From positions 248,001-312,000 of IMG/VR virus record IMGVR_UViG_3300017917_001123: a DNA stretch of 64,000 nucleotides; one strand, given 5' to 3'. The notes beneath the pieces are model-generated. The model ran no database searches and was not told where the DNA came from. It worked only from the letters and a program-made list of their open reading frames with translations. Below are positions 1,101-63,157 of this stretch, in pieces. The position numbers were made by a program, and so were the translations under genes. Within the stretch, counting starts at the first letter, position 1. Each line of letters opens with the position of its first letter.

Positions 1101-1141
1101 GAAAATATTTATAGGTGCTCTAGCCTAGCTTAAATATTTGT
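1101..1141. promoter_or_regulatory. back-to-back T4-late-like promoters
   Basis: TATAAATA on minus (1113-1106) 5 nt before ATG 1100; TAAATA on plus (1131-1136) 5 nt before ATG 1142; no SD. Confidence 0.6.
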
Positions 1142-2194
1142 ATGGCCTTCTACAACACAATCAAAGAGTTAGACATAGAACACAGCGCAGTTTGTAATGC
1201 GGCCTGTCCTCAGTGTACAAGAGAGCTTCGCCCCGGAGACTACAGTTGGTTTAACCAAACATGGCTTCCTACAGAGTTTTACCAAGAGCGTATTCCACAA
1301 TATGTATTAGACAACTTAGAAACTATCTTCTTTAGTGGCATGGTAGGCGATCCTTGTGCGGCTCCTAACTTCTTAGAAGTGTGTAAGGTTATTAAAGAAC
1401 GTGCTCCGCATATCCATATTAAGATTAGTACTAATGGAGGTATGCGTAGTCCTGCTTGGTGGGCAGAGCTTGCTAGTATATTAGGGCAAGGTAGTTGGGT
1501 TCGTTTTGCTATTGACGGACTAGCAGACACTAATCATATCTATCGTGTTAATGTAAGTTGGAATAAAGTTGTTGCTAACGTAGATGCGTTTATTAAATCT
1601 GGCGGAGAAGCAGAATGGCAGTATATTGTGTTCAAACACAACGAGCATCAAGTAGAAGAAGCAAAGAAATTATCTGAAGATATGGGCTTTGCTAGATTTG
1701 TTATTAGACGCAGTCATCGCTTCTTGCTAGATGCTCTATTTGAAACACAGTACGTGGGTATCTCTGTTCCTACTAATGACAAATATGTACATCCGTTGAT
1801 TCTACAAAAGAAGAAAGTGTTTAACATTGTAGATGCGTTAAAAGTATCCAACGATAGTAGTGTAACTTGTGAAGTACAAGGACGCAAGAGTGTTTACATA
1901 TCAGCAGATGGTTGGGTGTTTCCTTGTGTATATACAGGAACATGTGTTCACTTAATGAAGACACGCAGTCTACATGACGGTTGGACTAAGTTATGGGAAG
2001 AGCATGGCGGAGATAAGATTAATCTATTAAAGAATGATTGGAACAGCATACTAAACGGTACGTTCTTTAATGGCATACAAGATAGTTGGAATGTAGGATA
2101 TGAGCAAGGACGACTTGCCGCATGTGGGTTATTTTGTAGTCAATCAGCCGCACGTATATTTGATAACAATGTAGACTACGATATAATAGAATGA
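1142..2194 (+). CDS. radical SAM protein with C-terminal twitch/SPASM-like domain
   Basis: CNAACPQC, GDP, ISTNGG, FAIDG; C-terminal C...YISADGWVFPC...ACGLFC. Confidence 0.85.
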   Translation: MAFYNTIKELDIEHSAVCNAACPQCTRELRPGDYSWFNQTWLPTEFYQERIPQYVLDNLETIFFSGMVGDPCAAPNFLEVCKVIKERAPHIHIKISTNGGMRSPAWWAELASILGQGSWVRFAIDGLADTNHIYRVNVSWNKVVANVDAFIKSGGEAEWQYIVFKHNEHQVEEAKKLSEDMGFARFVIRRSHRFLLDALFETQYVGISVPTNDKYVHPLILQKKKVFNIVDALKVSNDSSVTCEVQGRKSVYISADGWVFPCVYTGTCVHLMKTRSLHDGWTKLWEEHGGDKINLLKNDWNSILNGTFFNGIQDSWNVGYEQGRLAACGLFCSQSAARIFDNNVDYDIIE

Positions 2195-3831
2195 CATATC
2201 AAGTAATATTATTTTCTGATACACCAGGAGCCGATTGGTTAAGTAGAGGCTATGGCACCTATCGCCTTGCTACAGAGCTACGTGAAGCGGGCTATTCTGT
2301 GTTGACTGTAGAGTATGCGTCTAGTCTTACTTGGGACAGGTATTGTGAAATTATAGATAGGACAGTAACAGCTGATACATTAGTTGTAGGATTTAGCACT
2401 ACGTGGTTTCCTTATCGCAGTCTTAATAAAATTAATCCTAGATACTCTGTAGGATTCAAGAGCAACAAAGAACATACAGACTTTAAACATGATCAACATC
2501 CATGGTATTACGAAAGTCTAAGCCATTGCTTCAGTCAAGAAGATCCGGACAAGTGGGTTGACTATGTTAAGACACGCAATTCAAAAGTTAAATGTGTTGT
2601 CGGCGGAGCAAAGAGTAACGAGTATGTGTTCGAACCTAAAGTAGATAACATCTTTATTGGCTTTAGTGAAAACATGATGTTGGACTATGTTAACAGCATT
2701 AGTGGTAAAGGACCTAAGCGCATCTTTAATAAGATTATTAACTATGATGTAAAAGCAAGTGATCCTCGTTTTGACTTTAAGAGCTCGTTTACACGTTATG
2801 TAGATACTGACTGTATTGTTCCGGGAGAAATGCTTACTATCGAGTTTGCTCGTGGTTGTATCTTTAACTGTAACTTCTGTAGCTATCCGCATCGCAATCA
2901 GCAGACTGCTGACTTTATCAAATACAAAGAAACTATCCGTGCTGAACTAATGGAAAACTACGAGCGTTGGGGCTGTACTCGTTATATGATTACAGACGAT
3001 ACATTTAACGATGCTACAGAAAAGTTAGTCTACATTAAAGAAGTTATTGAAACATTGCCATTCAAGCCTAAGTTTTGGGCATACTGTCGTATGGACTTGT
3101 TCCATAAGTACCCTGAGCAAATACAGTTAATGAAAGACATTGGTGTTACTGAAGTCTACTACGGTTTAGAAACTTGGCACGATAAAACTGCTAAGGCCAT
3201 TGCCAAAGGTGGTAAGCTACAGAACAAGATCAATGCTATGAAGAAAGCTCGTGAAGTATGGGGTAATGATGTTTATGTTACTGTAGGACTTGTAATGGGT
3301 TTACCACATGATACAGTTCAAAGCGTAACTGATGCTTGCGAATGGTTTAAAGCAGAAGGACACAATTATGTCGATTGGTTTAATGTGAGCTCGTTAACTG
3401 TGTATCCTCCTACAGACAATCAAAAGTACAAGTTCTTTAGTGATATCGAAAAACACTTAGACAAATATGGTTACACATTTCCAGACATTGAAAACAATCC
3501 AATCAATTGGCATCGTGCCGATGACGGAGACATTAATAGTAAAGAACAAGCAGACAAACTAATGGACTATTGGATGAAGGAACTAATGCCTTATCAAAAG
3601 AATAGAAAGCAGATGTGGTTTGCTGGTGCGCTTACTGTAATTGATCCTCGCTTAGACTTTGAAAATTTACTTAAAGCTGAGAAGGATGAATGGAACGATA
3701 TCTTTAGTGCGTTTAAGCCTACTGAATACTATTGGAAGTATGTTAATTACTATTACTGGCCTAAACTGCTAGCGATGCTTGATACATCTGTGCCTAGTCG
3801 TTCATTAGATGTTGCGTGTGTTTCTGGATAA
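2191..3831 (+). CDS. cobalamin-binding-domain radical SAM protein (class B-like)
   Basis: N-terminal YRLATELREAGY..V, GFS, VVGG B12-domain pattern; EFARGCIFNCNFC; DDTFN; GLET; GLPHDT. Confidence 0.8.
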   Translation: MTYQVILFSDTPGADWLSRGYGTYRLATELREAGYSVLTVEYASSLTWDRYCEIIDRTVTADTLVVGFSTTWFPYRSLNKINPRYSVGFKSNKEHTDFKHDQHPWYYESLSHCFSQEDPDKWVDYVKTRNSKVKCVVGGAKSNEYVFEPKVDNIFIGFSENMMLDYVNSISGKGPKRIFNKIINYDVKASDPRFDFKSSFTRYVDTDCIVPGEMLTIEFARGCIFNCNFCSYPHRNQQTADFIKYKETIRAELMENYERWGCTRYMITDDTFNDATEKLVYIKEVIETLPFKPKFWAYCRMDLFHKYPEQIQLMKDIGVTEVYYGLETWHDKTAKAIAKGGKLQNKINAMKKAREVWGNDVYVTVGLVMGLPHDTVQSVTDACEWFKAEGHNYVDWFNVSSLTVYPPTDNQKYKFFSDIEKHLDKYGYTFPDIENNPINWHRADDGDINSKEQADKLMDYWMKELMPYQKNRKQMWFAGALTVIDPRLDFENLLKAEKDEWNDIFSAFKPTEYYWKYVNYYYWPKLLAMLDTSVPSRSLDVACVSG

Positions 3832-8215: not shown

Positions 8216-8847
8216 GCTACGTTATCCAACAACACTTTCCTATTAAAACATACAAGACACACTTCGATCCTATTGGGGAACTAAAGGTATCTATGATGAC
8301 TAAGTTAACCAAACTATGGGAACAAGCGGCGGAAGTATCAAACGAAATTACAGACTGTGTTGTTGGACAAACAGATTGTGGATACGTAATTGATCCACAC
8401 TTAGAACGTTGGGAAGAAACACAAGAGCTTATTGCGTTCTTAAACAAACACGTTCAAACATATTGGGAAGTTTTAGGCTATAGCAAAACATTACAGCCTT
8501 ATGTTCATAGCATGTGGAGTAACAGATCGCATGAGCGTAGTTATATTCATTCTCACATACACAGCCCTATGCCAATTGCCGGTACAGTTTATCTAGAAGT
8601 AAACAAGGATATGGGCAACTTTGTGTTAGAAGATCCAAACGAAATGCTGTTACGTTCGCAACCTGTGGACGACCCTGATTCTATTGCTGAAGACGAAATT
8701 GATGTTGCTGTGGGAGATGTTTTAATGTTTCCAGGATATGTGCGTCACAGAACGATTAGTAACAAAACAACAACTCCTAGGATTACATTACCTTTTGTAA
8801 TTGGGTGTAAAGGTACATTCTCAACTGATCATTGGCGTTCAGCATAA
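8212..8847 (+). CDS. 2OG-Fe(II) oxygenase, TIGR02466-like
   Basis: MWSN...HSHIH..IAGTVYL, GDVLMFPGYVRHRT, RITLPF; start re-chosen at the ATGA overlap (8212). Confidence 0.75.
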   Translation: MSYVIQQHFPIKTYKTHFDPIGELKVSMMTKLTKLWEQAAEVSNEITDCVVGQTDCGYVIDPHLERWEETQELIAFLNKHVQTYWEVLGYSKTLQPYVHSMWSNRSHERSYIHSHIHSPMPIAGTVYLEVNKDMGNFVLEDPNEMLLRSQPVDDPDSIAEDEIDVAVGDVLMFPGYVRHRTISNKTTTPRITLPFVIGCKGTFSTDHWRSA

Positions 8848-9518
8848 ATGATTACACGCTGGCCGCGTACAAACTGTTCGTAATCATTGCTGTCTGGAAC
8901 ATATAGTTCTGTTTTAAATCCAAACATCTTTAAAATATTAAGCACAGCATCTAAGTCTGGAACTAGTGCTATGTCTGTTGGTCCGCCTATGTTTGAATCA
9001 CTGTAGTCGCTGACCAATGTAAAAGTACCCAACGGACTTCTTATAGATTTATATGTACCATCTTCTACGTGAGGCTTGCTAGAACTAGCAACCTGTGTTT
9101 CAATAACACAATACTTCTTTGCCATATTGTTAATGCGGCGAAGTATCTCTATAGGATTCTCTACATGATACAGGACACCGTAACACAATGCCAAGTCTAC
9201 TCTAGCAACGTGTTGTTCTATGAGAGCTTGTTTAAATGTAGAACGGCCGTTGCCTAGTTTGCTGTAGATGTATTGTGCTTGTTCAATAGAATCAGTAAAT
9301 CGGTCAATTCCTTCTACCTTAGGAATGTGCTTTTCTAATTCTAATGTAAAGTATCCTTGATGGCAACCCAAGTCTATTGCTGACTCGCAAGGGTGTGTAT
9401 CCAAGAATTGTTGTAACGCTTTAATTCTAGTTTCGTGTAACGGTAACACTTCTGCTGGAAGCATACATTCAATACCGTCAATTGGAAAAGGATAAAACCA
9501 TCCGTTAAGCTGTGCCAT
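8829..9518 (-). CDS. class I SAM-dependent methyltransferase
   Basis: IDLGCHQGYF motif I, GIDRF, DLALCYGVLYHV, CVIETQ. Confidence 0.8.
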   Translation of the reverse strand: MAQLNGWFYPFPIDGIECMLPAEVLPLHETRIKALQQFLDTHPCESAIDLGCHQGYFTLELEKHIPKVEGIDRFTDSIEQAQYIYSKLGNGRSTFKQALIEQHVARVDLALCYGVLYHVENPIEILRRINNMAKKYCVIETQVASSSKPHVEDGTYKSIRSPLGTFTLVSDYSDSNIGGPTDIALVPDLDAVLNILKMFGFKTELYVPDSNDYEQFVRGQRVIIYAERQ

Positions 9519-9557
9519 GATGTATTTAAGGCGTCAAAAGTACCCAATAAATAGATC
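9519..9557. promoter_or_regulatory. back-to-back late-type promoters
   Basis: TTAAATA minus (9529-9523) 4 nt before ATG 9518; TAAATA plus (9548-9553) 4 nt before ATG 9558. Confidence 0.6.
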
Positions 9558-10730
9558 ATGGTGCCGCTAATCAATCAATTTCGTAATGCTAATCTAGAAC
9601 TTCTATTCGACGAAATAAAGGCCCGCGGAGGCACGGTACTAAAACCTACTATTAGTTTGTGCCATAAATGTCACTATCATATACCTGCTTATACCTATCA
9701 CGTAAACAATCAGCTTTGGTTAGTTAAAGTTTGTAAGTCGCACGGTGTAAGCCATCACATGATTGAGCGTGATTACGAATTCTATTCTAATCTAGTTTAT
9801 ACTGAAAGCATTTTTAGTTTTACCAAACTTAATGTAATGACAGAAGTTACAGATCGTTGTAATGCTAATTGCCCACATTGTTATCATATACCAGACAACA
9901 CACCTGACGAAAGTACGGAAACAACAATCAATAGAATACGCAGTTGGTATAAGCCAGGAACTAGTATTATACTAGCAGGTGCTGAGCCTGTGTTACGTAA
10001 TGACATAGCTGAATTAATTCAAGAGATTAACGTTAACTTTCCAGACAGTGAAATAGCAACTCTTAGCAACGGAATACGTTTTAGTGATAAAAAATTAGTT
10101 CGCAAGGTAATGGACTCTAATTTAAAAGCAGTATTGATTGGACTAAATCATCCTAGCTATCTAAACAATCCTACAATAAGAAATAAACAATTAGAAGGTA
10201 TCAATAATTGTTTAGAAGAGGGACTTCCTTTATATTACATTGGATACACAATGAGTAGCACAAGTGAGCTACACGACATTCTAAATGAGATTGTTAGTAT
10301 GCCTTGGCAACCTAGACAGTTTAGAATACGTTACGGAAGTGATATTGGACGTTATCCAGAACAAGAACGCTTGTACGTCAGCGATACCTATAAGTTAATA
10401 AAGAAGTGGTGCGAGGACAATGGCAAACAGTTTGAAGATATGTTAGGAGACAATAATCTTTATCATACAATGGTAAAAGTTGAAGGCAAACCTATTCGAG
10501 TTATTCAATGGTGTGATGAAACAGATATTCACATGGAAGAACTTAGAACAGGACCCTATTGTGATTTTGTAGGAGATGGTATTACAAACTTCCTACATCA
10601 AGTTATTCGCAGAGATATATCAAAAAACAAACATATTGTGTTGCCCGATAAACCTATGAGTAGATATACAATAGATAGCGTGTTTGATAAAACAGAGTTA
10701 GACTTAAATGAATATTGTAACAGAAATTAA
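9558..10730 (+). CDS. radical SAM protein, MJ0619/Tes (GDGT-MAS)-family-like, with N-terminal rubredoxin-like CxxC-x20-CxxH
   Basis: SLCHKC..HIPA....K.C.SHG...D.EFY; EVTDRCNANCPHC; AGAEPVLRNDI; SNGIRF. Confidence 0.75.
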   Translation: MVPLINQFRNANLELLFDEIKARGGTVLKPTISLCHKCHYHIPAYTYHVNNQLWLVKVCKSHGVSHHMIERDYEFYSNLVYTESIFSFTKLNVMTEVTDRCNANCPHCYHIPDNTPDESTETTINRIRSWYKPGTSIILAGAEPVLRNDIAELIQEINVNFPDSEIATLSNGIRFSDKKLVRKVMDSNLKAVLIGLNHPSYLNNPTIRNKQLEGINNCLEEGLPLYYIGYTMSSTSELHDILNEIVSMPWQPRQFRIRYGSDIGRYPEQERLYVSDTYKLIKKWCEDNGKQFEDMLGDNNLYHTMVKVEGKPIRVIQWCDETDIHMEELRTGPYCDFVGDGITNFLHQVIRRDISKNKHIVLPDKPMSRYTIDSVFDKTELDLNEYCNRN

Positions 10731-15191: not shown

Positions 15192-16374
15192 AGTCTTTAA
15201 TATAAGGAAATAAACTTCTGTAGTCCGTACTGCGGAGTTTGTCGTACATTCTTAAAATACGAGTACGTTCTTTAACCACATGATCAAAGTCAATAGGATG
15301 TTCGTCAAGTATCCTACATATATTAGCAATATCTTCATTTGCCGAATAAGGTATTAACAGTTCTTTTACTTCCTGACGCTGTTCTGGCTCCATATACTCT
15401 ATGCTTAGATAATCAGGCTGTTGTACAAGTCTATAATAAGAGTGTGTATTAAGTTTGCCTTCTTTGTGTAATGACTCGTACATATCAATTAGTCTAGGTA
15501 GTTGATATATGTTTAATATAGATATAGCAAGCGAAATGCCACGTTGTATATTTGTTTCACACAGTTTATCAAAGTTGTTAAGAAATTGATTATAGTCAGC
15601 AGGATATCTAATATATTTGAAATAGTCTGCTCTATCGTGATCCCAACTAATAAACAATGATGCTTCTTTAAACTTGTTGAGCTTATCTAATATATTGTTT
15701 GATATGTTTGTTAAGTTAGTAACAAACCCTATCTTTAAATGTGTGTAATCTTGTTCTATACAGTAGTCTAGTATAGCATGTAAGTCAGGACTGCTTAAAG
15801 GTTCGCCACCGTCAATTAACAGTATGTCTACTTTACCTAATACATTTTTAAGGTTGTTAGACATATTGCCTTTTGGTGCTTTCATTTTACTACCAAACTG
15901 TGCGTCAATATACTCTATCCATTCTGGCACAGGCAATCCTTGCTTACGCATTAATTTAACTTCTGTTTCGTGCGAGGAACTGTGATACGGTGTACACATC
16001 AAACATTTAAGATTACAGGTGTTGCTTAACTTTACATCTAATTGCGACGGTGCTATATTGAGGTAGCCGTTGTTATTTTTACAATCAGCAATAGCATTAT
16101 TAAGTTCTTCGTTAAGTGGAAAGTTGCTTTTAACTCTTTTACTAACTAATCCTCTAGAGTCAGCTTCCCAGCATCTAATACAGTTTGAATTCTTAACTCC
16201 GTTAAGTAAGTCCATTCTTAGATTACGGAAGTATTCATTATTCCAACCTGTTTCGATATCTTCTGTATAGATATTAGAATTAGATGAACAGTTACTTTGT
16301 TGACAAGCCTGTAGATCTCCGTTACGTTCTGTACAAACGTTAATAAACGGAAGAATACAAAAAGTATCACTCAT
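15184..16374 (-). CDS. radical SAM protein with N-terminal twitch domain
   Basis: Same architecture; CNLKCLMC; GGEP; paralog of its neighbours. Confidence 0.85.
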   Translation of the reverse strand: MSDTFCILPFINVCTERNGDLQACQQSNCSSNSNIYTEDIETGWNNEYFRNLRMDLLNGVKNSNCIRCWEADSRGLVSKRVKSNFPLNEELNNAIADCKNNNGYLNIAPSQLDVKLSNTCNLKCLMCTPYHSSSHETEVKLMRKQGLPVPEWIEYIDAQFGSKMKAPKGNMSNNLKNVLGKVDILLIDGGEPLSSPDLHAILDYCIEQDYTHLKIGFVTNLTNISNNILDKLNKFKEASLFISWDHDRADYFKYIRYPADYNQFLNNFDKLCETNIQRGISLAISILNIYQLPRLIDMYESLHKEGKLNTHSYYRLVQQPDYLSIEYMEPEQRQEVKELLIPYSANEDIANICRILDEHPIDFDHVVKERTRILRMYDKLRSTDYRSLFPYIKDYE

Positions 16375-17665
16375 AGCGTTTCAAATACGGAAACAAGGTC
16401 TTGTGATCAGTTCCGCGAATTCTATCATACATATCTAGCACACGAGTTCTTTCTTTACAGACGGCATCGTGGTCTGGCTGTCGTCTATCCATGTAACCCG
16501 GGACACTAATTACACTTTCAACAAATTCTGGATTGTCTCTAAAGATCTTCCAGTCTTTGTTCTTAAACATAAAGCGATGTATTCTATCTGATATTTCTAC
16601 CTTTTGATTTTGCTCTAAGTAGCGTAGGCTAAAGTAATTAGGATAGTAAATTAAACCAAAGTTAATAACAAACCTATTAGGAGTGCGTTGGGAAATCTTT
16701 TCCCACTCTGTAAAGATATCCTCAAAGTCAAAGATATTAAAGATACCCCATGTAGTGCTTAGTTTCTTTTCAATATGGTCATACTCCCATATCTTATCAA
16801 AGTTCTCTTTAAACACAGCGTAGTCTGCTGGGTATCTAATAAAGTTAAACTTTACAGGGTCTATGTGATCGTAACTAATACACAGCATTGGATGTTTAAA
16901 TTGATCTAACAGATTAATTGTTTTGGGATTAATAACACTTAGGTTAGTGATAATCTGTAGCATCATATTAGGTGCGTAACCTTTTTCAACGCATTGTTCT
17001 AATATGCGTTGTGTTGTTTTGTTTACCAAAGGTTCGCCGCCTACAAGACTCATATGTATTGCTTGCTTGAGGCTAGGATCTAAATTGTTAACAACTTGTT
17101 CCACATCTAGATTGCGTGGATTAAAGTCATTCATGTCTAACTTTAATTCAATTACACGCTGATCCCATGTCTTCATTAACGCAGGTATTTCTTCGCCTGC
17201 GGCTTTCATTGCTTCTACTTCTTCGTGCTGTAGACTGCTACTACCCGGGTAACACATAATACACTTAAGGTTACATTGTGTACCTACCTTTAAGTCTAAG
17301 TCAGTAGGCGGTGTAGTCAGTGCGCCGTCGTTAGAAATAGCATCCTTAACAAATGAATCATAGTCAGGATACATGTTATGCTTTTCGTCATTTGTCTTTT
17401 GTCGCTTGCTGTATGCTCCGCTTGCTTCATAGTTCCAGCAATACTCGCACGTAGAGTTTTTAACTCCGTTGATTAGATCTTTGCGTAGTTGTTTGTAGTG
17501 CTCGCTGTTCCAAACTTCAATAACAGAGTCTTTACGCATATTGTATGCCGTGCCATCTGGTTTAGTAATAACCTTCTCTTCTGAACAACAGCAGACACGA
17601 TAGTTGCCATCGTTAGTAGAACTAATATGTGTAAATGGTAAAAGGCAAAAAGTATTCTGATTCAT
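16367..17665 (-). CDS. radical SAM protein with N-terminal twitch domain (alternative start 17674)
   Basis: FCLLPF..NYRVCCC..WNS..CEYCW; CNLKCIMC; GGEP. Confidence 0.85.
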   Translation of the reverse strand: MNQNTFCLLPFTHISSTNDGNYRVCCCSEEKVITKPDGTAYNMRKDSVIEVWNSEHYKQLRKDLINGVKNSTCEYCWNYEASGAYSKRQKTNDEKHNMYPDYDSFVKDAISNDGALTTPPTDLDLKVGTQCNLKCIMCYPGSSSLQHEEVEAMKAAGEEIPALMKTWDQRVIELKLDMNDFNPRNLDVEQVVNNLDPSLKQAIHMSLVGGEPLVNKTTQRILEQCVEKGYAPNMMLQIITNLSVINPKTINLLDQFKHPMLCISYDHIDPVKFNFIRYPADYAVFKENFDKIWEYDHIEKKLSTTWGIFNIFDFEDIFTEWEKISQRTPNRFVINFGLIYYPNYFSLRYLEQNQKVEISDRIHRFMFKNKDWKIFRDNPEFVESVISVPGYMDRRQPDHDAVCKERTRVLDMYDRIRGTDHKTLFPYLKRYE

Positions 17666-17673
17666 TATCAGCA

Positions 17674-17697
17674 TATTTAACTGCTAGTAAATACCTC
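17674..17697. promoter_or_regulatory. back-to-back late-type promoters
   Basis: TTAAATA minus (17680-17674) 8 nt before ATG 17665; TAAATA plus (17688-17693) 4 nt before ATG 17698. Confidence 0.55.
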
Positions 17698-18240
17698 ATG
17701 AACTTTATTAGTAACACCGGTACCTTAATAGACTGGGACGCAGTTATTAAACAATGCGAGAAAGCAACTGGTAATACCTTACAGTATAACAGCGAGTGCT
17801 TTCCCGATACAGAAGACTTCCGTAAGATAGACACGCTATGGCAAGAAGCGGGTTACTTCCGTGACGATCCTAGCATTGAATGGACTAACTATTTTCCCGG
17901 AGACTTTGACGCTAGTGTTGTTGATACATTTAAGAGTATTGTAAACGCAGAGCCCTGGATGGTATGGGTCAGTAAGATCAATCCGGGACAAATGGCTCCG
18001 TGGCATTTTGACGCACATCAAAAGATTAACGAACTACTTGCTTTAGGTACACCTGTTCGCTTTACTTGCTATATCCAAGAACCACAGCACGGACATATCA
18101 GTATTGTAGGAGAGAGCGCAGTCTATCGTCCTGCCAAAGGTAGCATCTATGTATGGCCTACATACAATGCTTGGCATTGTGGTATGAATGGAGGACTAAC
18201 TCCCAAGTATATGTTTAACTATTGGGGTTATAGACCTTAG
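17698..18240 (+). CDS. putative 2OG-Fe(II) oxygenase
   Basis: KINPGQMAPWHFD, RFTCYI, GSIYVW, AWHCGMN, PKYMFNY; paralog-like to 12332..12943; start re-chosen at ATG 17698. Confidence 0.6.
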   Translation: MNFISNTGTLIDWDAVIKQCEKATGNTLQYNSECFPDTEDFRKIDTLWQEAGYFRDDPSIEWTNYFPGDFDASVVDTFKSIVNAEPWMVWVSKINPGQMAPWHFDAHQKINELLALGTPVRFTCYIQEPQHGHISIVGESAVYRPAKGSIYVWPTYNAWHCGMNGGLTPKYMFNYWGYRP

Positions 18241-18805: not shown

Positions 18806-19586
18806 TTCCTAGTTTCTGGCGGAACGTTTCTGTAAACTTGCCGTCAATGCGTAAGCTGTAGCTTTGTTCCATAATTGTTTCTCCTCCGTGCCAGTCTTGA
18901 TCGTTCCACCAAGCGGCTCGGCAGTTAATATAAGTTTTGTCCTTGCGTTCTGGATCCCAAAGATAAAACGCTTTCTTTGTGTTAGGACGAATGTGAATAA
19001 ACTCGTTGCGATGTGGAAATGTTTTATCAATGCCGTTTTTAGCATCTAAGTCACGATGCTCAAAAGGAATGCCATTATGATCACAGTGAAAGAATATTAC
19101 TCTGCCAATGTGTTCAAAGATACCAAATGTAATTAAGTCCTCAACCCAACGGACAACATTAGGAAAATAAGCAGCCTCGGCTGTGAGCTTACGTGGAGCG
19201 GTTCTATCGTCCCAACTGCCTTCTTCCCAGAGGAAATAGTAAATGTATGGATCGTAAGCACCTAATGCCATCTTTAGGTACCTAGTAAATTTGTTTCGTG
19301 TTTCGTGATCTTTAATTCCGCAGTATAGATCCCATCCACCTTTTTTAATTGGGTCATCGTCGGGGAGTGCTAGGAATTCTTCTAAGGCTTTATAGATTGG
19401 CTTCCAATTTGGAACATAGCTCATATCTTTAAAGGTAAAACCTGGAGTCATCCAAGTGCCTTCTTTGGCAAACATTCGAGCCTCAGCAAACCCGCGAATG
19501 ATTTCGGGTTGTAGGCTCTCAAACTCATCCATCCTTAAATACTGTTCAAGATTGAAATACGGTCGGTTGTTAATACCTTTGATCAT
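18783..19586 (-). CDS. hypothetical protein, probable cupin/2OG oxygenase fold
   Basis: GRVIFF..HNGIPFEHRD, WWNDQDWHGG, YSLRIDG. Confidence 0.5.
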   Translation of the reverse strand: MIKGINNRPYFNLEQYLRMDEFESLQPEIIRGFAEARMFAKEGTWMTPGFTFKDMSYVPNWKPIYKALEEFLALPDDDPIKKGGWDLYCGIKDHETRNKFTRYLKMALGAYDPYIYYFLWEEGSWDDRTAPRKLTAEAAYFPNVVRWVEDLITFGIFEHIGRVIFFHCDHNGIPFEHRDLDAKNGIDKTFPHRNEFIHIRPNTKKAFYLWDPERKDKTYINCRAAWWNDQDWHGGETIMEQSYSLRIDGKFTETFRQKLGIDHIESY

Positions 19587-19609
19587 ATAATTAATTATCG
19601 TAAAAAATT
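19587..19609. promoter_or_regulatory. divergent gap with variant TAATTA boxes
   Basis: Minus strand reads GATAATTAATTATATG: TAATTA 5 nt before ATG 19586. Confidence 0.35.
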
Positions 19610-21036: not shown

Positions 21037-21592
21037 ATATCGCCATACGTCCGCCGTCGACAGGTTGTTCTTCTACTTCGTGCCACAAGAATCCGGGCCA
21101 TGCTAATAAGTCACCTTCTTCTGGTTGTATAGTAACTAGCTTTTGTCTATACGGAGCCATTCCTGTTTGCCCTTCAAAAGGATTGTAGAAAGTAATTGCG
21201 CTACTGCCTGCGGGCATTTTGTGATAGTAAGTCATTACCATCTCAGTCGACCCGTGTGCGTGTCCGCCTAGCTTAGACCCTTTAAAGAACTGATTAATCC
21301 AACTGCGCTCTATAGCAATATCGCAGTCTTCGTAGCCAATTTCTCTCCACAGATCTTTCATGACGCTTTCGGCCCATTTGCGAAAAGGATAAACACTAGG
21401 TAAGTTCATGATGTCGTTAAACTGACGAATGGTAGTGCTGTATTCGCCCTTAGCAGTATCAATTTTTCTATCCTCTGGTACATTGTTGAGGATATCGTTG
21501 ATCTCTTTATCAAATGCTTCGCCTAGTAAATGACGATCCTGCCATTTGGTTTTGGCAATGATGACAGGAAAAACATTTTGTGCTATAATCAT
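20978..21592 (-). CDS. 2OG-Fe(II) oxygenase, TIGR02466-like
   Basis: SWINQF...GHAH...TYY, GDLLAWPGFLWHEV, RMAIS. Confidence 0.75.
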   Translation of the reverse strand: MIIAQNVFPVIIAKTKWQDRHLLGEAFDKEINDILNNVPEDRKIDTAKGEYSTTIRQFNDIMNLPSVYPFRKWAESVMKDLWREIGYEDCDIAIERSWINQFFKGSKLGGHAHGSTEMVMTYYHKMPAGSSAITFYNPFEGQTGMAPYRQKLVTIQPEEGDLLAWPGFLWHEVEEQPVDGGRMAISMHVHQGSYALADRWRKIS

Positions 21593-21610
21593 GATGTAAA
21601 TACTTAGCTT
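21593..21610. promoter_or_regulatory. overlapping divergent late-type boxes
   Basis: TAAATA plus (21597-21602) 8 nt before ATG 21611; TAAGTA minus (21606-21601) 8 nt before ATG 21592. Confidence 0.5.
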
Positions 21611-22162
21611 ATGACATACACCATTAAACCCTATTCCGATGACTTAGACCTAACAGAGTTTTACCAAGAAGCAGAGCGTCGTGGTTTTGTCAATAATGCT
21701 AACAAGAAGATGCTAGTTGATAGCATTTCAAAAGAGCGAGAGTGGTGCGTGTGGGTTCTTTACTACAACGATAAAGCCGTAGGCACAGTAGGCGCACACA
21801 CTCTAGATATGTTTCCAAACGCTGTCCGTATTTGTGTAAGGACTTGTGCATTTACTGATATGTTGCCTACTCCTAGTCTTCGTACTCGAGTAGGCATCAC
21901 AAGTCATCAGCACGTTACAGCACAGTTCTTTATGCCTATTTGTATCGAATGGGCAGGTAACAGAGATATGTATATTACCAGTCATGATAGTGATGTAGGA
22001 ACACAGCGATTAGTTCATACTATCTGGGGACCTACATTAGAGATGACTGGTGTGTTGTCCAACGCGGGTGCTTATGATTATAGAGGACACAGACAAACGT
22101 TCTGGAAACTAAACAAGGATGTATTCCTTGAGCAGTTAAACAAGGAACCTAGATGGAAATAA
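21611..22162 (+). CDS. hypothetical protein, possible GNAT-like fold
   Basis: WVLYYNDKAVGTVG beta-hairpin pattern followed by RICVR; no clear acetyl-CoA motif. Confidence 0.35.
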   Translation: MTYTIKPYSDDLDLTEFYQEAERRGFVNNANKKMLVDSISKEREWCVWVLYYNDKAVGTVGAHTLDMFPNAVRICVRTCAFTDMLPTPSLRTRVGITSHQHVTAQFFMPICIEWAGNRDMYITSHDSDVGTQRLVHTIWGPTLEMTGVLSNAGAYDYRGHRQTFWKLNKDVFLEQLNKEPRWK

Positions 22163-34912: not shown

Positions 34913-34935
34913 ATAAATATTATACGCATATTTAG
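34913..34935. promoter_or_regulatory. divergent late-type boxes between iscA and iscU
   Basis: ATAAATA plus 34913-34919; CTAAATA minus 34935-34929; iscU has SD AAGGAG. Confidence 0.5.
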
Positions 34936-37645: not shown

Positions 37646-37896
37646 GCTTATATAAACAACTACACATTGACACAATTAAGTTAGGAGCCCGTGCCCAAAC
37701 TGAACACGATTTTGGAGAGGAGGGAGCCATTCTTATTCCAAATGGAAAATCCAAAATATTTGTACATTGGATGACCGACAAAGGCAATATTCGTTCAACT
37801 TGGACTATGACTTATGCGTCCAAAATAAAAGGAAAAGTTCGTTTAATTAACGGTTTGGACAATGAACTTTCAATTCAAGTCTTGACAGACTGGTAA
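37642..37896 (+). CDS. hypothetical protein
   Basis: 84-aa ORF, ATGA overlap. Confidence 0.5.
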   Translation: MSLYKQLHIDTIKLGARAQTEHDFGEEGAILIPNGKSKIFVHWMTDKGNIRSTWTMTYASKIKGKVRLINGLDNELSIQVLTDW

Positions 37897-37910
37897 ATCT
37901 TTGCTATAAT
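37882..37910 (+). promoter_or_regulatory. consensus sigma70 (early-type) promoter
   Basis: TTGACA (37882-37887), 17 nt, TG-c-TATAAT (37905-37910), upstream of the ligase with SD AAGGA. Confidence 0.85.
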
Positions 37911-41106: not shown

Positions 41107-41602
41107 CCCAACTTGGGTGCGCCATGTGAAATGGCAACTTCTTACGTTGTTCAATAAGTTCCCAATAAGTAGGCTTATAAGGCTTCTTCTTAGGCACGAT
41201 TTTCTTGTTGTTACCCTTGTTTGCGTTACATGGAGAACAGGCAGTCGTTGCGTTTTCAAAGGTAGACTTACCACCGTGCGATGTTGGAACCACGTGGTCT
41301 AGGGTAGCAGTCTTTTTATTGACTTCGGTACCGCAGTACTGGCATTTAAATCCGTCGCGAAGAAATACGTTCTGCTTAGAGTAGCGAACGCCTGTTTTCG
41401 GCTTCATGTATTCTTTTACCATAATAACAGCCGGTACAGGAGTAGACCAGCGAGCTGATCTAACGACCCAGTCGTCGTGCCATTCCAATACAATAGCTTT
41501 GTCCAAAACCATGTATCGAATAGCTTCCTGCCATGTAATTACACTCAACGGAAGCATTGAAACTGGGCTTCCGTCTGTGTTTAAAACTAAAACGTCTGAC
41601 AT
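41075..41602 (-). CDS. HNH endonuclease (McrA/HNH_5-like)
   Basis: VLVLN, NVFLRD.F.CQYCG, TLDHVVP.S.GG.S.FEN.TTAC..CN..K. Confidence 0.9.
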   Translation of the reverse strand: MSDVLVLNTDGSPVSMLPLSVITWQEAIRYMVLDKAIVLEWHDDWVVRSARWSTPVPAVIMVKEYMKPKTGVRYSKQNVFLRDGFKCQYCGTEVNKKTATLDHVVPTSHGGKSTFENATTACSPCNANKGNNKKIVPKKKPYKPTYWELIEQRKKLPFHMAHPSWATYLGQNGSN

Positions 41603-41609
41603 AATCACA

Positions 41610-41684
41610 TATTTAGTGGGGGTTAAAACAGCTTTTAGTATAACAGATCACAATGGTTTAATCAAGAGCTCTAGGCAATAAATA
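41610..41684. promoter_or_regulatory. divergent late-type boxes
   Basis: CTAAATA minus (41616-41610) 7 nt before ATG 41602; TAAATA plus (41679-41684) 6 nt before ATG 41691. Confidence 0.55.
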
Positions 41685-41690
41685 CGCAGT

Positions 41691-41957
41691 ATGAGCCGCC
41701 AAAAATCACTATTACAAGAATATACCGCCGATCCAAAAGCTATAAAAGAAGCACGTTCTGAGCCCTTTCCAGAGCCAGTAATCGACCGCAGTTTGAGCTT
41801 TTTACGTGCTATTGTGCTAGATTTACCCATCCAAACGGGTAGTGTAGTAGAAAGTACACAAGAATATACCGAAATGGAACGAGCAATTATGGAAGGTGGA
41901 CACAGTTTAGAAGAAGAACAAATGGCAATGCTTAAAAAATTAGCAGGATTAAAATAA
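41691..41957 (+). CDS. hypothetical protein
   Basis: 88-aa ORF directly after a TAAATA box; ends LKKLAGLK. Confidence 0.6.
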   Translation: MSRQKSLLQEYTADPKAIKEARSEPFPEPVIDRSLSFLRAIVLDLPIQTGSVVESTQEYTEMERAIMEGGHSLEEEQMAMLKKLAGLK

Positions 41958-47611: not shown

Positions 47612-47612
47612 T

Positions 47613-49181: not shown

Positions 49182-49193
49182 TTTGGAAAAAAT

Positions 49194-51944: not shown

Positions 51945-51947
51945 GGT

Positions 51948-51953
51948 TAAATA
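51948..51953 (+). promoter_or_regulatory. late-type TAAATA box
   Basis: 5 nt before ATG 51959. Confidence 0.55.
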
Positions 51954-51958
51954 TAACT

Positions 51959-52303
51959 ATGAGAGCAACTGACCTAATCCGAAGCGTACTTTGCGTGATC
52001 GACCAAATTGAACAAAAAGAACAACAAGCAGAAATTCCAGCGTCGGCTACTATTTCTGTAAGTGTTCCACCAGAAGAAGTTCACCAAGCTGATGTAGTAG
52101 AGCCAGGGTTTAAGCAGATCTTTGATTTGCTTTCCGGACGTAGACACGGTCAGTATGCCAATAGCCCAACCGAAACAGTAGCAGGTATTGATTCAGTAAC
52201 CAAAGACGCCGGAGCAGAAGGTTGGAACGGAACAAAGCATCCAGCAGATTTACGTGTAAAGGATCCTTCAATGTATCCTAACTCACAATTAGGGAGTCAA
52301 TAA
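51959..52303 (+). CDS. hypothetical protein
   Basis: 114-aa ORF after a TAAATA box. Confidence 0.65.
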   Translation: MRATDLIRSVLCVIDQIEQKEQQAEIPASATISVSVPPEEVHQADVVEPGFKQIFDLLSGRRHGQYANSPTETVAGIDSVTKDAGAEGWNGTKHPADLRVKDPSMYPNSQLGSQ

Positions 52304-52530
52304 TGTCTTTAAACGGAATAAGCACACTACCTACAAAACGCGAGCGCCAAGATGCTAAACTAGCACAGGCGGCATTAGATCGTGCGGCAGATGGCAATCC
52401 TCGTTCTACTCTTAACGCAACTCAATTACCTACAAGATATAAAGTAGGCGACAACGATACAGCAGATGTTGTTGATAATCCTAACGTTGGAGGCCTAGTA
52501 CAAGGCAGACCCTGGACAACCGGAGATTAA
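52303..52530 (+). CDS. hypothetical protein
   Basis: 75-aa ORF, SD GGGAG, TAATG overlap. Confidence 0.65.
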   Translation: MSLNGISTLPTKRERQDAKLAQAALDRAADGNPRSTLNATQLPTRYKVGDNDTADVVDNPNVGGLVQGRPWTTGD

Positions 52531-52533
52531 TCA

Positions 52534-54158: not shown

Positions 54159-54164
54159 TAAGTA
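54159..54164 (+). promoter_or_regulatory. late-type TAAGTA box
   Basis: 5 nt before ATG 54170. Confidence 0.45.
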
Positions 54165-54169
54165 CTATT

Positions 54170-54493
54170 ATGAAAATACAGCAAATTTTTGAAGCACCTA
54201 TTGCCGCTACAGACGATCCTAATAATCCTATGATTTATGGACATGAAAAAGCTAATCCAATGGACCTAAAGGGTCGCATTGTACAAGCTCGCGGACAATT
54301 AAAAGAATTAGCTCAGTTAGCAGAAACAAATGATCTAGCTAGCTGGCAACGTATTTGTCAATTAGCCAAGGGCGGAATGTTTATGGGCCTAGAGCAGAAC
54401 TTAGAACAAATTCGTCATGGTATAGAAGAACTAAGTAAAAAGAGAGCCAAAGGCGGTGTTCAAAGCCGCGGCATAGATAAAAACATAGGATAA
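54170..54493 (+). CDS. hypothetical protein
   Basis: MKIQQIFEAPI...; start re-chosen at ATG 54170. Confidence 0.6.
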   Translation: MKIQQIFEAPIAATDDPNNPMIYGHEKANPMDLKGRIVQARGQLKELAQLAETNDLASWQRICQLAKGGMFMGLEQNLEQIRHGIEELSKKRAKGGVQSRGIDKNIG

Positions 54494-55897: not shown

Positions 55898-55926
55898 ATT
55901 ATATATCTTTTTATTTAAAATGTCAA
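55898..55926 (-). promoter_or_regulatory. consensus sigma70 promoter
   Basis: TTGACA (55926-55921), 17 nt, TATAAT (55903-55898); a TAAATA box also lies at 55917-55912. Confidence 0.85.
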
Positions 55927-59458: not shown

Positions 59459-59466
59459 TATAAATA
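59459..59466 (+). promoter_or_regulatory. perfect T4 late consensus TATAAATA
   Basis: Intergenic, 28 nt before ATG 59495. Confidence 0.65.
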
Positions 59467-62553: not shown

Positions 62554-63138
62554 ATGAATTTAACACTTCAAGAAATGCTGAATAAAACTAATCAGCGTCA
62601 AATTACTTTTCAGCTAATGCTTGATCATCTTAGAAGGACTAACAATCCTCTTATCATCGAAACAGGGTGTGCTAGAGCAGAACGTCATGGCTTTGACGGC
62701 GATGGATATAGCACATTGATCTTTGATAAGTTTGTAAATGAACACGGCGGAGAATTACGCACAGTTGATATTAGTCCTGAAAGTGTAGCATGGGGTAAAT
62801 CTCAAACCAGTTCCAAAGCACAGTTTTTCTGCGAAGATAGTGTCAGTTTTCTATGGAAATTGAACAAAGAATTGGCTGAATCTGGTCGTTATATTGACCT
62901 ATTGTACTTAGACAGTTTTGACTTTGAACCAAGCAATCCGCATCCTAGCTCTTTCCACCATGTAAAAGAATTAACTGCTATCTTTAGTCGTTTGCGTCCC
63001 GGTACTATGATTGCTGTAGATGATAACTTTGGCAATGCTGAAAATCGTACAGGCAAAGGCAAATACGTTGAAGAATTCATGAAAAACATTGGTGTTCCGT
63101 TAGTTTACGATGGGTATCAATTGCTGTGGGTGCTTTAA
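62554..63138 (+). CDS. class I SAM-dependent methyltransferase (Methyltransf_24-like)
   Basis: IIETGCAR, TVDIS, EDSVSFL, IDLLYLDS, MIAVDD, GKG. Confidence 0.75.
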   Translation: MNLTLQEMLNKTNQRQITFQLMLDHLRRTNNPLIIETGCARAERHGFDGDGYSTLIFDKFVNEHGGELRTVDISPESVAWGKSQTSSKAQFFCEDSVSFLWKLNKELAESGRYIDLLYLDSFDFEPSNPHPSSFHHVKELTAIFSRLRPGTMIAVDDNFGNAENRTGKGKYVEEFMKNIGVPLVYDGYQLLWVL

Positions 63139-63150
63139 GGTAAAAGCTAG

Positions 63151-63157
63151 ATAAATA
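63151..63157 (+). promoter_or_regulatory. late-type ATAAATA box
   Basis: Intergenic, before SD AGAGGA and ATG 63180. Confidence 0.55.

What the first reader, a model, noticed from the sequence alone, without database searches (positions are those of the whole stretch)
1101..63157. TAAATA boxes 4-8 nt before ATG: a late programme apparently built on near-leaderless mRNAs and tiny bidirectional promoters
Seen: TA(A/T/G)-type TAAATA/TAAGTA/TAATTA boxes sit 5, 5 (1100/1142), 4, 4 (9518/9558), 8, 4 (17665/17698), 5 (19586), 8, 8 (21592/21611), 7, 6 (41602/41691), 5 (51959) and 5 (54170) nt before start codons that lack an SD. Divergent pairs share gaps of only 18-90 nt. Perfect TATAAATA occurs at 1106-1113 (minus) and 59459-59466. 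Boxes lying further from the start (34913, 57119, 63151) front genes that do have an SD. Established: T4 gp55 recognises TATAAATA and starts a few nt downstream. Inference: many late transcripts begin at or within a few nt of AUG, an unusual systematic use of leaderless translation. Ligase, the exonuclease and the 55.3-56.6 kb module instead have sigma70 promoters.
Basis: partly seen in the sequence, partly recalled or inferred. Interest (0 to 1): 0.62.

Follow-up and report, generated by a model that had tools for sequence, protein, structure and literature searches.

The report
Late promoters fused to start codons
In this uncultivated 331-kb freshwater jumbo phage and its relatives, a six-base T4-type late promoter box sits a fixed five bases before the ATG of about a tenth of the genes, so these messages should start at the start codon with no ribosome-binding leader, an arrangement cultured relatives lack.

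Summary
The window is bases 248001-312000 of a 331,570-bp IMG/VR phage contig related to Pseudomonas phage PA5oct and the Rak2-like jumbo phages.

- **Motif and spacing:** TAAATA is about three-fold depleted and half its copies are intergenic. All 20 TAAATA-N5-ATG sites open ORFs of 70-735 codons. 35 of 359 genes carry the box 4-9 nt before ATG, and none has an SD.
- **Sigma factor and geometry:** the genome encodes a gp55-family late sigma. The T4 late box occupies -13 to -6, so N5 places +1 on the A of ATG.
- **Independent support:** the -1 base is a pyrimidine in 24/26 boxed starts. Sigma70-type TATAAT boxes fuse to ATG at N6, as their geometry predicts. Terminators lie directly upstream of some boxes, and 21 of 35 boxed genes sit at divergent junctions.
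- **Conservation:** box and spacing are kept at TerL (77/78 loci) and at a divergent adaptor pair (70/78 loci) in relatives. A second complete genome shows the same N5 peak.
- **Contrast:** T4, PA5oct, an Asteriusvirus phage, Phosso and Atu_ph07 lack the peak or any N5 enrichment.

No RNA data exist, so the transcription start sites remain inferred. I rate this a new variant of known kinds.

The parts
1098..1113 (-). TATAAATA/TAAATA box (1106-1113), 5-nt spacer and ATG (1098-1100) of gene 483-1100, an Asp/Asn beta-hydroxylase-like protein. This is the left half of a divergent pair with a 41-nt gap.
1131..1144 (+). TAAATA box (1131-1136), 5-nt spacer and ATG of gene 1142-2194 (radical SAM). This is the right half of the same divergent pair.
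9516..9528 (-). TAAATA box (9523-9528), 4-nt spacer and ATG of gene 8829-9518 (methyltransferase). Divergent pair with a 39-nt gap.
9548..9560 (+). TAAATA box (9548-9553), 4-nt spacer and ATG of gene 9558-10730 (radical SAM). In relative L151 the same divergent pair has N5 on both sides.
17663..17679 (-). TAAATA box (17674-17679), 8-nt spacer and ATG of gene 16367-17665 (radical SAM). Divergent pair with a 32-nt gap.
17688..17700 (+). TAAATA box (17688-17693), 4-nt spacer and ATG of gene 17698-18240.
19584..19597 (-). Variant box TAATTA (19592-19597), 5-nt spacer and ATG of gene 18783-19586. This is a weak candidate, because the variant is not statistically supported on its own.
21590..21606 (-). 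Variant box TAAGTA (21601-21606), 8-nt spacer and ATG of gene 20978-21592 (2OG-Fe(II) oxygenase). It overlaps the opposite box inside an 18-nt gap.
21597..21613 (+). TAAATA box (21597-21602), 8-nt spacer and ATG of gene 21611-22162.
41600..41615 (-). TAAATA box (41610-41615), 7-nt spacer and ATG of gene 41075-41602 (HNH endonuclease, with a PA5oct orthologue).
41679..41693 (+). TAAATA box (41679-41684), 6-nt spacer and ATG of gene 41691-41957.
51948..51961 (+). TAAATA box, 5-nt spacer and ATG of gene 51959-52303, inside the virion-protein block.
54159..54172 (+). Variant box TAAGTA, 5-nt spacer and ATG of gene 54170-54493.
34914..34934 (.). Back-to-back far boxes. TAAATA at 34914-34919(+) lies 48 nt before the SD-led ATG at 34968. 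TAAATA at 34929-34934(-) lies 27 nt before the ATG at 34901. These are leadered late promoters of the ordinary T4-like layout.
59459..59466 (+). TATAAATA lying 28 nt before the ATG at 59495 (499-aa virion or tail-like protein). Leadered late promoter.
63152..63157 (+). TAAATA lying 22 nt before the SD-led ATG at 63180. Leadered late promoter.
37882..37910 (+). Perfect sigma70-type promoter (TTGACA, 17 nt, TG-TATAAT) in front of the SD-led ATP-dependent DNA ligase gene 37940-39229. This is the early/middle class.
55898..55926 (-). Perfect sigma70-type promoter (TTGACA, 17 nt, TATAAT) in the 55.3-56.6 kb module, followed by a leader with an SD.

Best explanation
TAAATA is the -10-like core of the phage's late promoters. 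It is read by host RNA polymerase core carrying the phage's gp55-family late sigma, which is encoded outside the window at contig 121445-122365. As in T4, the box occupies -11 to -6 and needs no -35 element, so transcription begins 6 nt after the box.

In about 35 genes the start codon sits exactly there (N5, the main class) or within 1-3 nt of it (N4, N6-N8). The mRNA therefore begins with, or 0-3 nt before, AUG. It has no Shine-Dalgarno sequence and must be translated by the leaderless pathway, in which ribosomes recognise a 5'-terminal AUG.

Because the promoter is only about 12 bp long and lies entirely between -11 and +1, two of them fit back to back in gaps of 12-41 nt. One also fits between a terminator's T-run and the next ATG.

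**Shown:**
- the motif, its spacing and its depletion elsewhere in the genome;
- the lack of an SD at boxed starts;
- the presence of the sigma homologue;
- conservation of box and spacing across the clade;
- the contrast with cultured relatives.

**Inferred:**
- that the sigma reads this box;
- the exact transcription start;
- that translation is leaderless;
- a plausible purpose: compact, individually transcribed, modestly translated late genes. TerL, an adaptor, enzymes and an HNH nuclease are of this type, whereas the major capsid protein keeps an SD.
For: 1. **Spacing.** There are 19-20 N5 sites against about 1.3 expected (P about 2e-16), and all 20 N5 ATGs open ORFs of 70-735 codons, so the ATG is the start codon.
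2. **Box distribution.** The box is about three-fold depleted and half its copies are intergenic.
3. **Sigma factor.** A gp55-family sigma is present, next to SbcD as in PA5oct and Asteriusvirus, and as gene 55 lies near gene 47 in T4.
4. **T4 geometry.** The T4 box lies at -13 to -6 (PMC1524935), so N5 puts +1 on the A of ATG. In leadered boxes the base at box+6 is A in 26/37 (second clade genome), 20/25 (PA5oct) and 16/26 (T4).
5. **The -1 base.** It is a pyrimidine in 24/26 boxed starts against 47% of other starts (P = 5e-6), and in 20/23 against 43% in the second genome. This is the usual Y(-1)R(+1) start-site preference.
6. **Internal control.** Sigma70-type TATAAT boxes (-12 to -7) are fused to ATG at N6 rather than N5. 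Five of 37 promoters do this, none has an ATG at N7-N19, and the second genome repeats the pattern.
7. **Position.** 21 of 35 boxed genes are at divergent junctions, and others directly follow terminator hairpins.
8. **Gene class.** Boxed genes with orthologues are late or structural: TerL, head-tail adaptor, tube-like and virion proteins. Their PA5oct orthologues carry ATAAATA 25-40 nt upstream (an SD-like GGAG or GAGG follows in three of them).
9. **Conservation.**
   - 77 of 78 TerL relatives (56-89% identity) keep TAA[AG]TA 4-8 nt before the ATG, 59 of them at exactly N5, while spacers and flanks differ.
   - 70 of 78 adaptor relatives keep N5, and 54 keep both divergent boxes.
   - A complete 344-kb clade genome has 26 N5 sites.
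10. **Start codon.** It is ATG in 49 N5 sites against at most 3 GTG/TTG sites, whereas 14.5% of SD-led starts are not ATG.
Against: - There is no RNA evidence at all. The only run holding this DNA is a pond DNA metagenome.
- The N4 class would put a T at +1 under strict T4 geometry. The N7/N8 classes (11 genes here) imply 2-3-nt leaders. The N7 site at the adaptor's neighbour keeps a conserved ACT before the ATG, which suggests a start 3 nt upstream rather than at the A.
- A 6-bp promoter carries little information and in T4 needs gp33 and the gp45 clamp. Neither was detected here.
- The leadered boxes in this genome do not show a clear A at box+6.
- The host is unknown. If it is a proteobacterium, as the beta-type tmRNA and the SD and sigma70 signals suggest, leaderless translation is generally regarded as inefficient there (my own knowledge).
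- Within the window alone, the strict N5 pattern is not above chance.
Confidence: 0.8

Rival explanations
1. UAAAUA is an RNA-level translation signal, a Shine-Dalgarno substitute or the binding site of a phage or host factor, placed 5 nt before AUG on ordinary leadered or polycistronic mRNAs that start elsewhere.
For: - A fixed distance to the start codon and the absence of an SD are also what a ribosome-positioning element would show.
- Fourteen boxed genes are co-directional with their upstream neighbour, nine of them with gaps of only 4-17 nt. They could be read from upstream transcripts.
Against: - The same box occurs 18-35 nt upstream of SD-led genes in this genome, and 23-34 nt upstream in T4, PA5oct and Asteriusvirus, where it cannot position ribosomes.
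- Boxed genes are strongly concentrated where new transcription must begin: at divergent junctions and right after terminators.
- The sigma70 -10 hexamer shows the same fusion one base further out (N6), which promoter geometry predicts and an RNA element does not.
- The pyrimidine at -1 fits a transcription start site.
- The spacing is sharper than that of the real SD in the same genome.
Confidence: 0.08
2. The boxes are promoters that give leaderless mRNAs, but they are read by the host primary sigma or by another phage factor rather than by the gp55 homologue. On this reading they need not be 'late'.
For: - No gp33 or gp45 partner was found.
- The leading TA of the T4 octamer is not conserved.
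- Many boxed genes in the window are enzymes (radical SAM, oxygenases, methyltransferase) rather than virion proteins.
- Sigma70-type promoters in the same genome also make N6 fusions.
Against: - TAAATA lacks the T at the last position of a sigma70 -10 hexamer, and there is no -35 or TG extension.
- The optimum spacing is N5, not the N6 seen for TATAAT.
- The box matches the late motif of T4 and of the Rak2-like phages (ATAAATA; PMC5259590), and it fronts TerL, adaptor and tail genes.
- A well-conserved gp55 homologue is encoded.
Confidence: 0.09
3. The pattern is a by-product of AT-rich intergenic DNA or of wrongly chosen start codons.
For: - In the window alone, TAAATA-N5-ATG is found 3 times against 1.55 expected.
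- My gene calls are crude.
Against: - The test that needs no gene calls gives 20 of 20 long ORFs at N5. Other hexamers of like composition give none of this peak.
- The motif is depleted, not enriched, overall.
- Box and spacing are conserved in relatives down to 56% protein identity while the flanks vary.
- A terminator directly upstream of the TerL box excludes a longer reading frame.
Confidence: 0.01

Closest known systems
T4 late promoters (TATAAATA read by gp55, with gp33 and the gp45 sliding clamp)
   Same: - A gp55-family sigma is encoded.
- There is an A/T box with the same core, no -35 element, and the box lies in front of packaging, head and tail genes.
- The box-to-start geometry (-13 to -6 in T4; PMC1524935) explains the N5 optimum.
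   Different: - In T4 the box peaks about 28 nt before the ATG and the leader carries an SD. Here the main class is fused to the ATG.
- Only the 6-mer is conserved.
- The sigma is about 120-135 residues longer at its N terminus.
- No gp33 or gp45 homologue was detected.
Late-promoter motif ATAAATA predicted in Rak2-like jumbo phages (CBB, GAP32; PMC5259590), and the nearest cultured relatives, PA5oct-like Pseudomonas phages
   Same: - Closest sequence relatives: sigma 47-48% and TerL 50% identical to PA5oct.
- The locus order virion protein / sigma / SbcD / SbcC is the same.
- The motif is the same, in front of structural genes.
- The CBB paper likewise reports no gp33 or gp45 in CBB.
   Different: - In PA5oct and the Asteriusvirus phage Ec-M-J the box lies 23-34 nt before the ATG, mostly with an SD-like core before the ATG, and there is no N5 peak.
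- Phosso and Atu_ph07 also show no enrichment.
- None of the papers I read mentions leaderless transcripts.
Thermus phage phiYS40: most middle and late transcripts are leaderless (as summarised in PMC3594737)
   Same: A phage whose later gene classes are largely expressed from mRNAs that start at the start codon.
   Different: - It is an unrelated phage whose host belongs to Deinococcus-Thermus, a phylum in which a -10 region adjacent to ORFs and leaderless mRNAs are common (PMC12340547).
- Its promoters are, to my knowledge, host-sigma -10 elements rather than a gp55-type box.
- That phage is reported to shift IF2 and IF3 levels. Here no IF3, S21 or S1 gene was found.
'-10 region adjacent to the ORF' architecture of Deinococcus-Thermus and Actinobacteria (PMC12340547, PMC4007540, PMC4633059)
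   Same: A promoter -10 element at a fixed short distance from ATG, no SD, and an AUG start.
   Different: - That architecture is a host-genome feature using the primary sigma. Here it is a phage late sigma box at N5, plus a few sigma70-type fusions at N6.
- This phage's other genes use strong AAGGAG-type SDs.
Poxvirus late promoters (TAAATG, with the initiator overlapping the start codon). This comparison rests on my own knowledge and was not tested.
   Same: A late-class viral promoter element built around TAAAT and fused to the ATG of the gene.
   Different: That is a eukaryotic cytoplasmic virus with its own polymerase and poly(A) heads added by slippage. There is no homology, so this is an analogy only.
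Jumbo phages with mapped transcription start sites (phiKZ: PMC8244752; AR9: PMC5312081)
   Same: Large phage genomes with phage-specific promoter classes.
   Different: - Both use their own multisubunit polymerases.
- No leaderless transcript was detected in phiKZ.
- AR9 5' UTRs are 26-491 nt long.

Membership tests
T4-type (gp55-dependent) late promoter system | The genome encodes a gp55-family late sigma factor. | tested here: met
   - phmmer with T4 gp55 gives E = 2.2e-7.
- The ORF matches phrog_12791 at 1.9e-86 and phrog_234 at 6e-27.
- It aligns to gp55 of PDB 7d7c.
- Synteny with SbcD matches PA5oct and Asteriusvirus; in T4 gene 55 lies near gene 47.
T4-type (gp55-dependent) late promoter system | A -10-region box related to TATAAATA, with no conserved -35 element. 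| tested here: met
   - The TAAATA core is invariant.
- The two bases upstream of it are not conserved.
- Nothing is conserved further upstream apart from terminator hairpins.
- PMC1524935 reports that the T at -13 is poorly conserved in other T4-like phages too.
T4-type (gp55-dependent) late promoter system | The box lies in front of late (virion and packaging) genes. | tested here: met
   TerL, head-tail adaptor, tube-like and virion proteins are boxed. In the window the box also fronts accessory enzymes.
T4-type (gp55-dependent) late promoter system | Transcription starts 6 nt after the box, and only late in infection. | not testable with these tools
   No RNA run holds this DNA. Indirect support comes from A at box+6 in leadered boxes of a clade genome, PA5oct and T4, and from the pyrimidine at -1.
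T4-type (gp55-dependent) late promoter system | A gp33 co-activator and a gp45 sliding clamp. | tested here: inconclusive
   There was no match with the T4 proteins or with phrog_254 and phrog_223. The contig is estimated 93% complete, and divergent analogues would be missed. The same absence is reported for CBB.
Bacterial leaderless mRNAs | The primary 5' end lies at, or within a few nt of, the start codon. | not testable with these tools
   This is predicted from promoter geometry only. No transcriptome is available.
Bacterial leaderless mRNAs | There is no Shine-Dalgarno sequence upstream of the start codon. | tested here: met
   0 of 26 boxed starts have an SD core, against 117 of 297 others. 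In my crude gene set the figure is 0 of 35.
Bacterial leaderless mRNAs | The start codon is AUG rather than GUG or UUG. | tested here: met
   There are 49 ATG sites against at most 3 GTG/TTG sites at N5 in the two genomes. Among strong-SD starts, 14.5% are not ATG. All TerL relatives use ATG.
Bacterial leaderless mRNAs | A promoter -10 element lies at a fixed short distance upstream of the start codon. | tested here: met
   There is an N5 peak for TAAATA and an N6 peak for TATAAT carrying a -35 element.

The most novel reading that the evidence does not exclude
An uncultivated freshwater jumbo-phage clade has made promoter-to-start-codon fusion a general rule of its gene expression: late box at N5, sigma70-type box at N6. 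This would imply that its host, possibly a betaproteobacterium, translates dozens of leaderless phage mRNAs efficiently. Either that host is unexpectedly good at leaderless initiation, or the phage retunes initiation late in infection by a factor not yet recognised. On this reading the leaderless versus SD-led choice would serve as a built-in dosage code for late proteins.
Probability: 0.25. Interest if true: 0.8.

Novelty: new variant of a known kind. Interest (0 to 1): 0.64.

Why it matters
T4-type late transcription is a textbook system, and its promoters have always been described with SD-bearing leaders. I found no report of them fused to start codons in the literature searched. A whole clade that fuses the late box to the start codon matters for several reasons.

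- **Minimal expression unit:** it shows how small a complete phage expression unit can be, at about 14 bp including the start codon. That explains the 12-41-nt divergent gaps that look impossibly short.
- **Annotation:** it gives a simple rule for start-codon and promoter annotation in hundreds of metagenomic jumbo-phage contigs.
- **Leaderless translation:** it offers a natural set of dozens of leaderless mRNAs in a phage whose other genes use strong SDs. This is a ready-made system for asking what leaderless initiation is for, and how efficient it is outside Actinobacteria and Deinococcus-Thermus.
- **Testable now:** the prediction can be tested without the unknown host, using core RNA polymerase plus the recombinant sigma in vitro.

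Tried and rejected
- **Similarity to cultured phages.**
  - Megablast of 11 kb of the window, and tblastn of one virion protein, found nothing in the phage collection.
  - TerL and sigma tblastn show the nearest isolates are PA5oct-like, at only about 50% identity. No cultured member of the clade is therefore available.
- **RNA evidence.** The look-up of sequencing runs returned only pond DNA metagenome contigs. Read laying was not used, because contigs cannot show RNA ends.
- **Phage-encoded translation factors that might favour leaderless mRNAs.** No IF3_C, ribosomal S21 or S1 domain was found.
- **gp33 and gp45.** Neither was found with the T4 proteins or with PHROG profiles.
- **Host from the tmRNA.** An exact 32-nt match of its 3' end hit Saprospiraceae, Opitutaceae and Geobacteraceae MAGs. 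That stretch is generic and uninformative.
- **Alternative genetic code.** A tRNA with anticodon CUA exists, but coding density is 94% under table 11 and read-through of TAG stops extends no gene. I kept the standard code.
- **Degenerate boxes as a class.** TAAGTA and TAATTA give only 2 long-ORF hits each at N5 here. I count them as candidates only.
- **A second register to explain N7/N8.** I looked for a shifted box inside the N7/N8 spacers and saw none.
- **Literature.** Searches for leaderless with jumbo phage, with late promoter, and for TAAATA found no description of this arrangement. The phiYS40 primary paper is not held.

Full report
**What the window is.** The window is bases 248001-312000 of a single 331,570-bp viral contig from IMG/VR, estimated 93% complete, with 41% G+C.
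- Its only sequencing-run holder is a pond DNA metagenome.
- It is a jumbo phage of the wider T4 superfamily. Its closest cultured relatives are PA5oct-like Pseudomonas phages (late sigma 47-48% identical, TerL 50%), followed by Rak2-like or Asteriusvirus phages.
- The local gene order is virion protein, late sigma, SbcD, SbcC, the same as in PA5oct and Asteriusvirus.
- My crude gene call gives 359 genes covering 94% of the contig under the standard code.

**Checking the observation.** Every cited site is present at the stated place and spacing.
- Within the window the strict pattern TAAATA-N5-ATG occurs only three times against 1.55 expected. The window alone would therefore not carry the claim.
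- TAAATA itself is strongly avoided in the window: 32 copies against 87.5 +/- 9.3 in shuffles.
- Across the whole contig there are 146 copies against 258 expected, and 75 of them lie in the 6% of the genome that is intergenic.
- A test that needs no gene calls asks, for each box, at what distance an ATG opens a long ORF.
  - It gives 19 at distance 5, 3 at 4, 7 at 7 and 4 at 8, against about 1.3 per distance elsewhere (Poisson P about 2e-16).
  - Hexamers of similar composition show no comparable peak apart from frame-shifted versions of the same motif.
- All 20 TAAATA-N5-ATG sites in the genome open ORFs of 70-735 codons. The ATG is therefore the start codon and not merely part of a promoter consensus, which would be in frame only one time in three.
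- A blind ranking of positional hexamers upstream of candidate starts puts TAAATA at distance 5 first, ahead of the SD hexamer AAGGAG.
- No boxed start has an SD core: 0/26 against 117/297.
- The variants TAAGTA and TAATTA are weakly supported here, with two N5 sites each.

**What reads the box.**
It matches phrog_12791 ('sigma factor for late transcription') at E = 1.9e-86 and phrog_234 at 6e-27. Residues 153-245 align to T4 gp55 in PDB 7d7c.
- It has its own perfect sigma70-type promoter and an SD.
- It is about 120-135 residues longer than T4 gp55 at the N terminus.
- No gp33 or gp45 homologue was detected. The same is reported for the related phage CBB, whose authors predicted an ATAAATA late motif before structural genes (PMC5259590).

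**Geometry.**
- The T4 late box lies between -13 and -6 (PMC1524935). TAAATA is then -11 to -6, and the sixth base after the box is +1. With N5 that base is the A of ATG.
- In leadered boxes (14-40 nt from an SD-led ATG), the base at box+6 is A in 26/37 in a second clade genome, 20/25 in PA5oct and 16/26 in T4. This is as expected for a start site. This genome's own 18 leadered boxes do not show it clearly.
- The base before the ATG of boxed genes is a pyrimidine in 24/26 against 47% of other starts (P = 5e-6). In the second genome it is 20/23 against 43%. This is the usual pyrimidine(-1)/purine(+1) start preference.
- Strong sigma70-type promoters, whose TATAAT lies at -12 to -7, should be fused one base further out, and they are.
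  - Among strong sigma70-type promoters, five of 37 have an ATG at exactly N6 and none at N7-N19.
  - Three of the five open ORFs of 78-177 codons.
  - The second genome repeats this pattern.
  - An RNA-level ribosome signal would not predict this one-base shift between the two promoter classes.

**Where the boxes sit.**
- Twenty-one of the 35 boxed genes are at divergent junctions, which make up only 44 of 359 gene starts.
- Nine junctions have both sides boxed, with gaps of 12, 18, 28, 29, 32, 39, 41 and 88 nt, plus one with a variant box.
- The TerL and tube-like genes have a terminator hairpin and T-run ending 2-4 nt before the box. The only room for a promoter there is the box itself.
- Boxed genes with recognisable orthologues are TerL, a head-tail adaptor, a tube-like protein and virion proteins.
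- In PA5oct those orthologues carry ATAAATA 25-40 nt upstream (an SD-like GGAG or GAGG follows in three of them).
- The major capsid protein and several other structural genes here keep an SD. The phage uses both layouts, and my reading is that leaderless genes are the lower-dosage class. That last point is inference.

**Conservation.**
- *TerL relatives.* Eighty IMG/VR loci have a TerL 56-89% identical to this one.
  - Seventy-seven of the 78 with upstream sequence have TAA[AG]TA 4-8 nt before the TerL ATG, and 59 have it at exactly N5.
  - The box usually follows a terminator. Spacers and flanks vary freely, and the -1 base is T in 88%.
- *Adaptor gene and its divergent neighbour.*
  - Seventy of 78 relatives (61-86% identical) keep N5 on the adaptor side.
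  - Fifty-four keep boxes on both sides, with gaps mostly of 26-33 nt.
  - The neighbour's N7 spacing is itself conserved, with ACT before the ATG, which suggests a 3-nt leader there.
- *A window pair.* The divergent pair at 9518/9558 is N5/N5 in one relative and absent in three others.
- *A second complete genome.* A 344,483-bp clade genome with terminal repeats, whose TerL is only 57% identical, has 48 TAARTA-N5-ATG sites against 9 in the reversed control. Its N5 peak is 26, with 2 at N4 and 2 at N6.
- *Cultured relatives.*
  - T4, PA5oct and an Asteriusvirus phage show no N5 peak. Their boxes peak at about 28, 23 and 26-34 nt.
  - Phosso and Atu_ph07 show no N5 enrichment.

The fusion is therefore a derived trait of an uncultivated clade.

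**Comparison with what is known.**
- Leaderless middle and late transcripts are known for Thermus phage phiYS40 (PMC3594737). Its host's phylum commonly places the -10 region next to ORFs (PMC12340547).
- No leaderless transcripts were found in phiKZ, and AR9 5' UTRs are 26-491 nt.
- The PA5oct paper, the CBB paper and my searches do not mention a late box fused to start codons.
- I therefore file this as a new variant of two known kinds: the gp55-type late promoter and bacterial leaderless mRNA.

**What remains open.**
- No transcription start site has been mapped.
- The N4, N7 and N8 classes do not fit the strict geometry.
- The partner proteins of the sigma are unknown.
- The host is unknown. 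A full-length match to the betaproteobacterial permuted tmRNA family and canonical sigma70 and SD signals point to a proteobacterium. An exact-match search with the tmRNA 3' end was uninformative.
- No phage gene for IF3, S21 or S1 was found.

Noticed in passing
window 1-37000: The left half of the window is a dense block of modifying enzymes, many on alternating strands and many with fused late boxes.
- At least six radical SAM proteins, two of them with B12-binding domains.
- An Asp/Asn beta-hydroxylase-like protein.
- 2OG-Fe(II) oxygenases and a SAM methyltransferase.
- A carbamoyltransferase (24623-26098).
- A tryptophan-halogenase-like protein (35679-36929).

It looks like a peptide, protein or small-molecule tailoring pathway carried by a phage. 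Its substrate is unknown.
   Followed up: partly
outside the window: contig 320017-320406 (L155:2017-2406, +): The phage encodes a full-length permuted tmRNA that best matches Rfam beta_tmRNA (152.6 bits, E = 2e-47). ARAGORN reads the tag as ANDEVYALAA. This hints at a betaproteobacterial host. A search with its 3' end in bacterial genomes was uninformative.
   Followed up: partly
outside the window: contig 329801-329875 (+): A tRNA with anticodon CUA, an amber-suppressor type that ARAGORN labels 'Pyl'. TAG ends only 9 of 359 predicted genes, and TAG read-through extends none of them. I saw no sign of recoding in this genome.
   Followed up: partly
outside the window: contig 10481-10518, 42437-42474, 43795-43833 (+): Perfect or near-perfect sigma70-type promoters (TTGACN, 16-18 nt, TATAAT) whose ATG lies exactly 6 nt after TATAAT and opens ORFs of 78-177 codons. 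Leaderless design is therefore not confined to the late class. The same is seen in the second clade genome.
   Followed up: yes
outside the window: contig 121445-122365 (L002:1045-1965, +): The gp55-like sigma is 306-321 aa long against 185 aa in T4. Its N-terminal extension of about 120-135 residues belongs to the PA5oct/Rak2-type family phrog_12791. No gp33 or gp45 homologue was found, so the extension might replace a partner. This was not tested.
   Followed up: partly
window 37905-37940, and contig 21963, 83254, 218679-222968, 324469: Several sigma70-type promoters are followed by a shared leader that starts right after TATAAT, roughly ATAYACATAC then AGTTAGA or ACTGAAAC, and then an SD. 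This may be a conserved early 5' UTR or a regulatory site.
   Followed up: no
window 21597-21606: The boxes of the divergent pair 21592(-)/21611(+) overlap on opposite strands, since TAAATACTTA read backwards is TAAGTATTTA, inside an 18-nt gap. At contig 241833/241846 the gap is only 12 nt. The two open complexes must exclude each other.
   Followed up: partly
window 41958-54156: A virion-protein block on the + strand. It holds a 585-aa tail-protein-like ORF, a 1291-aa ORF with a head-decoration-like stretch, a subtilase (S8) protease of 522 aa (47613-49181), a 916-aa ORF with no family match, and a virion structural protein (52534-54156).
   Followed up: no
outside the window: contig 96779-110761 (-): A single ORF of 4660 codons with weak similarity (24-28%) to giant proteins of PA5oct and Asteriusvirus.
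   Followed up: no
L170-L249 (relatives of the adaptor locus): The N7 spacing of the adaptor's divergent neighbour is conserved as N7, with the spacer ending in ACT before the ATG, in about 40 relatives. This suggests a fixed 3-nt leader (5'-ACU-AUG) for that gene rather than a start at the A.
   Followed up: partly
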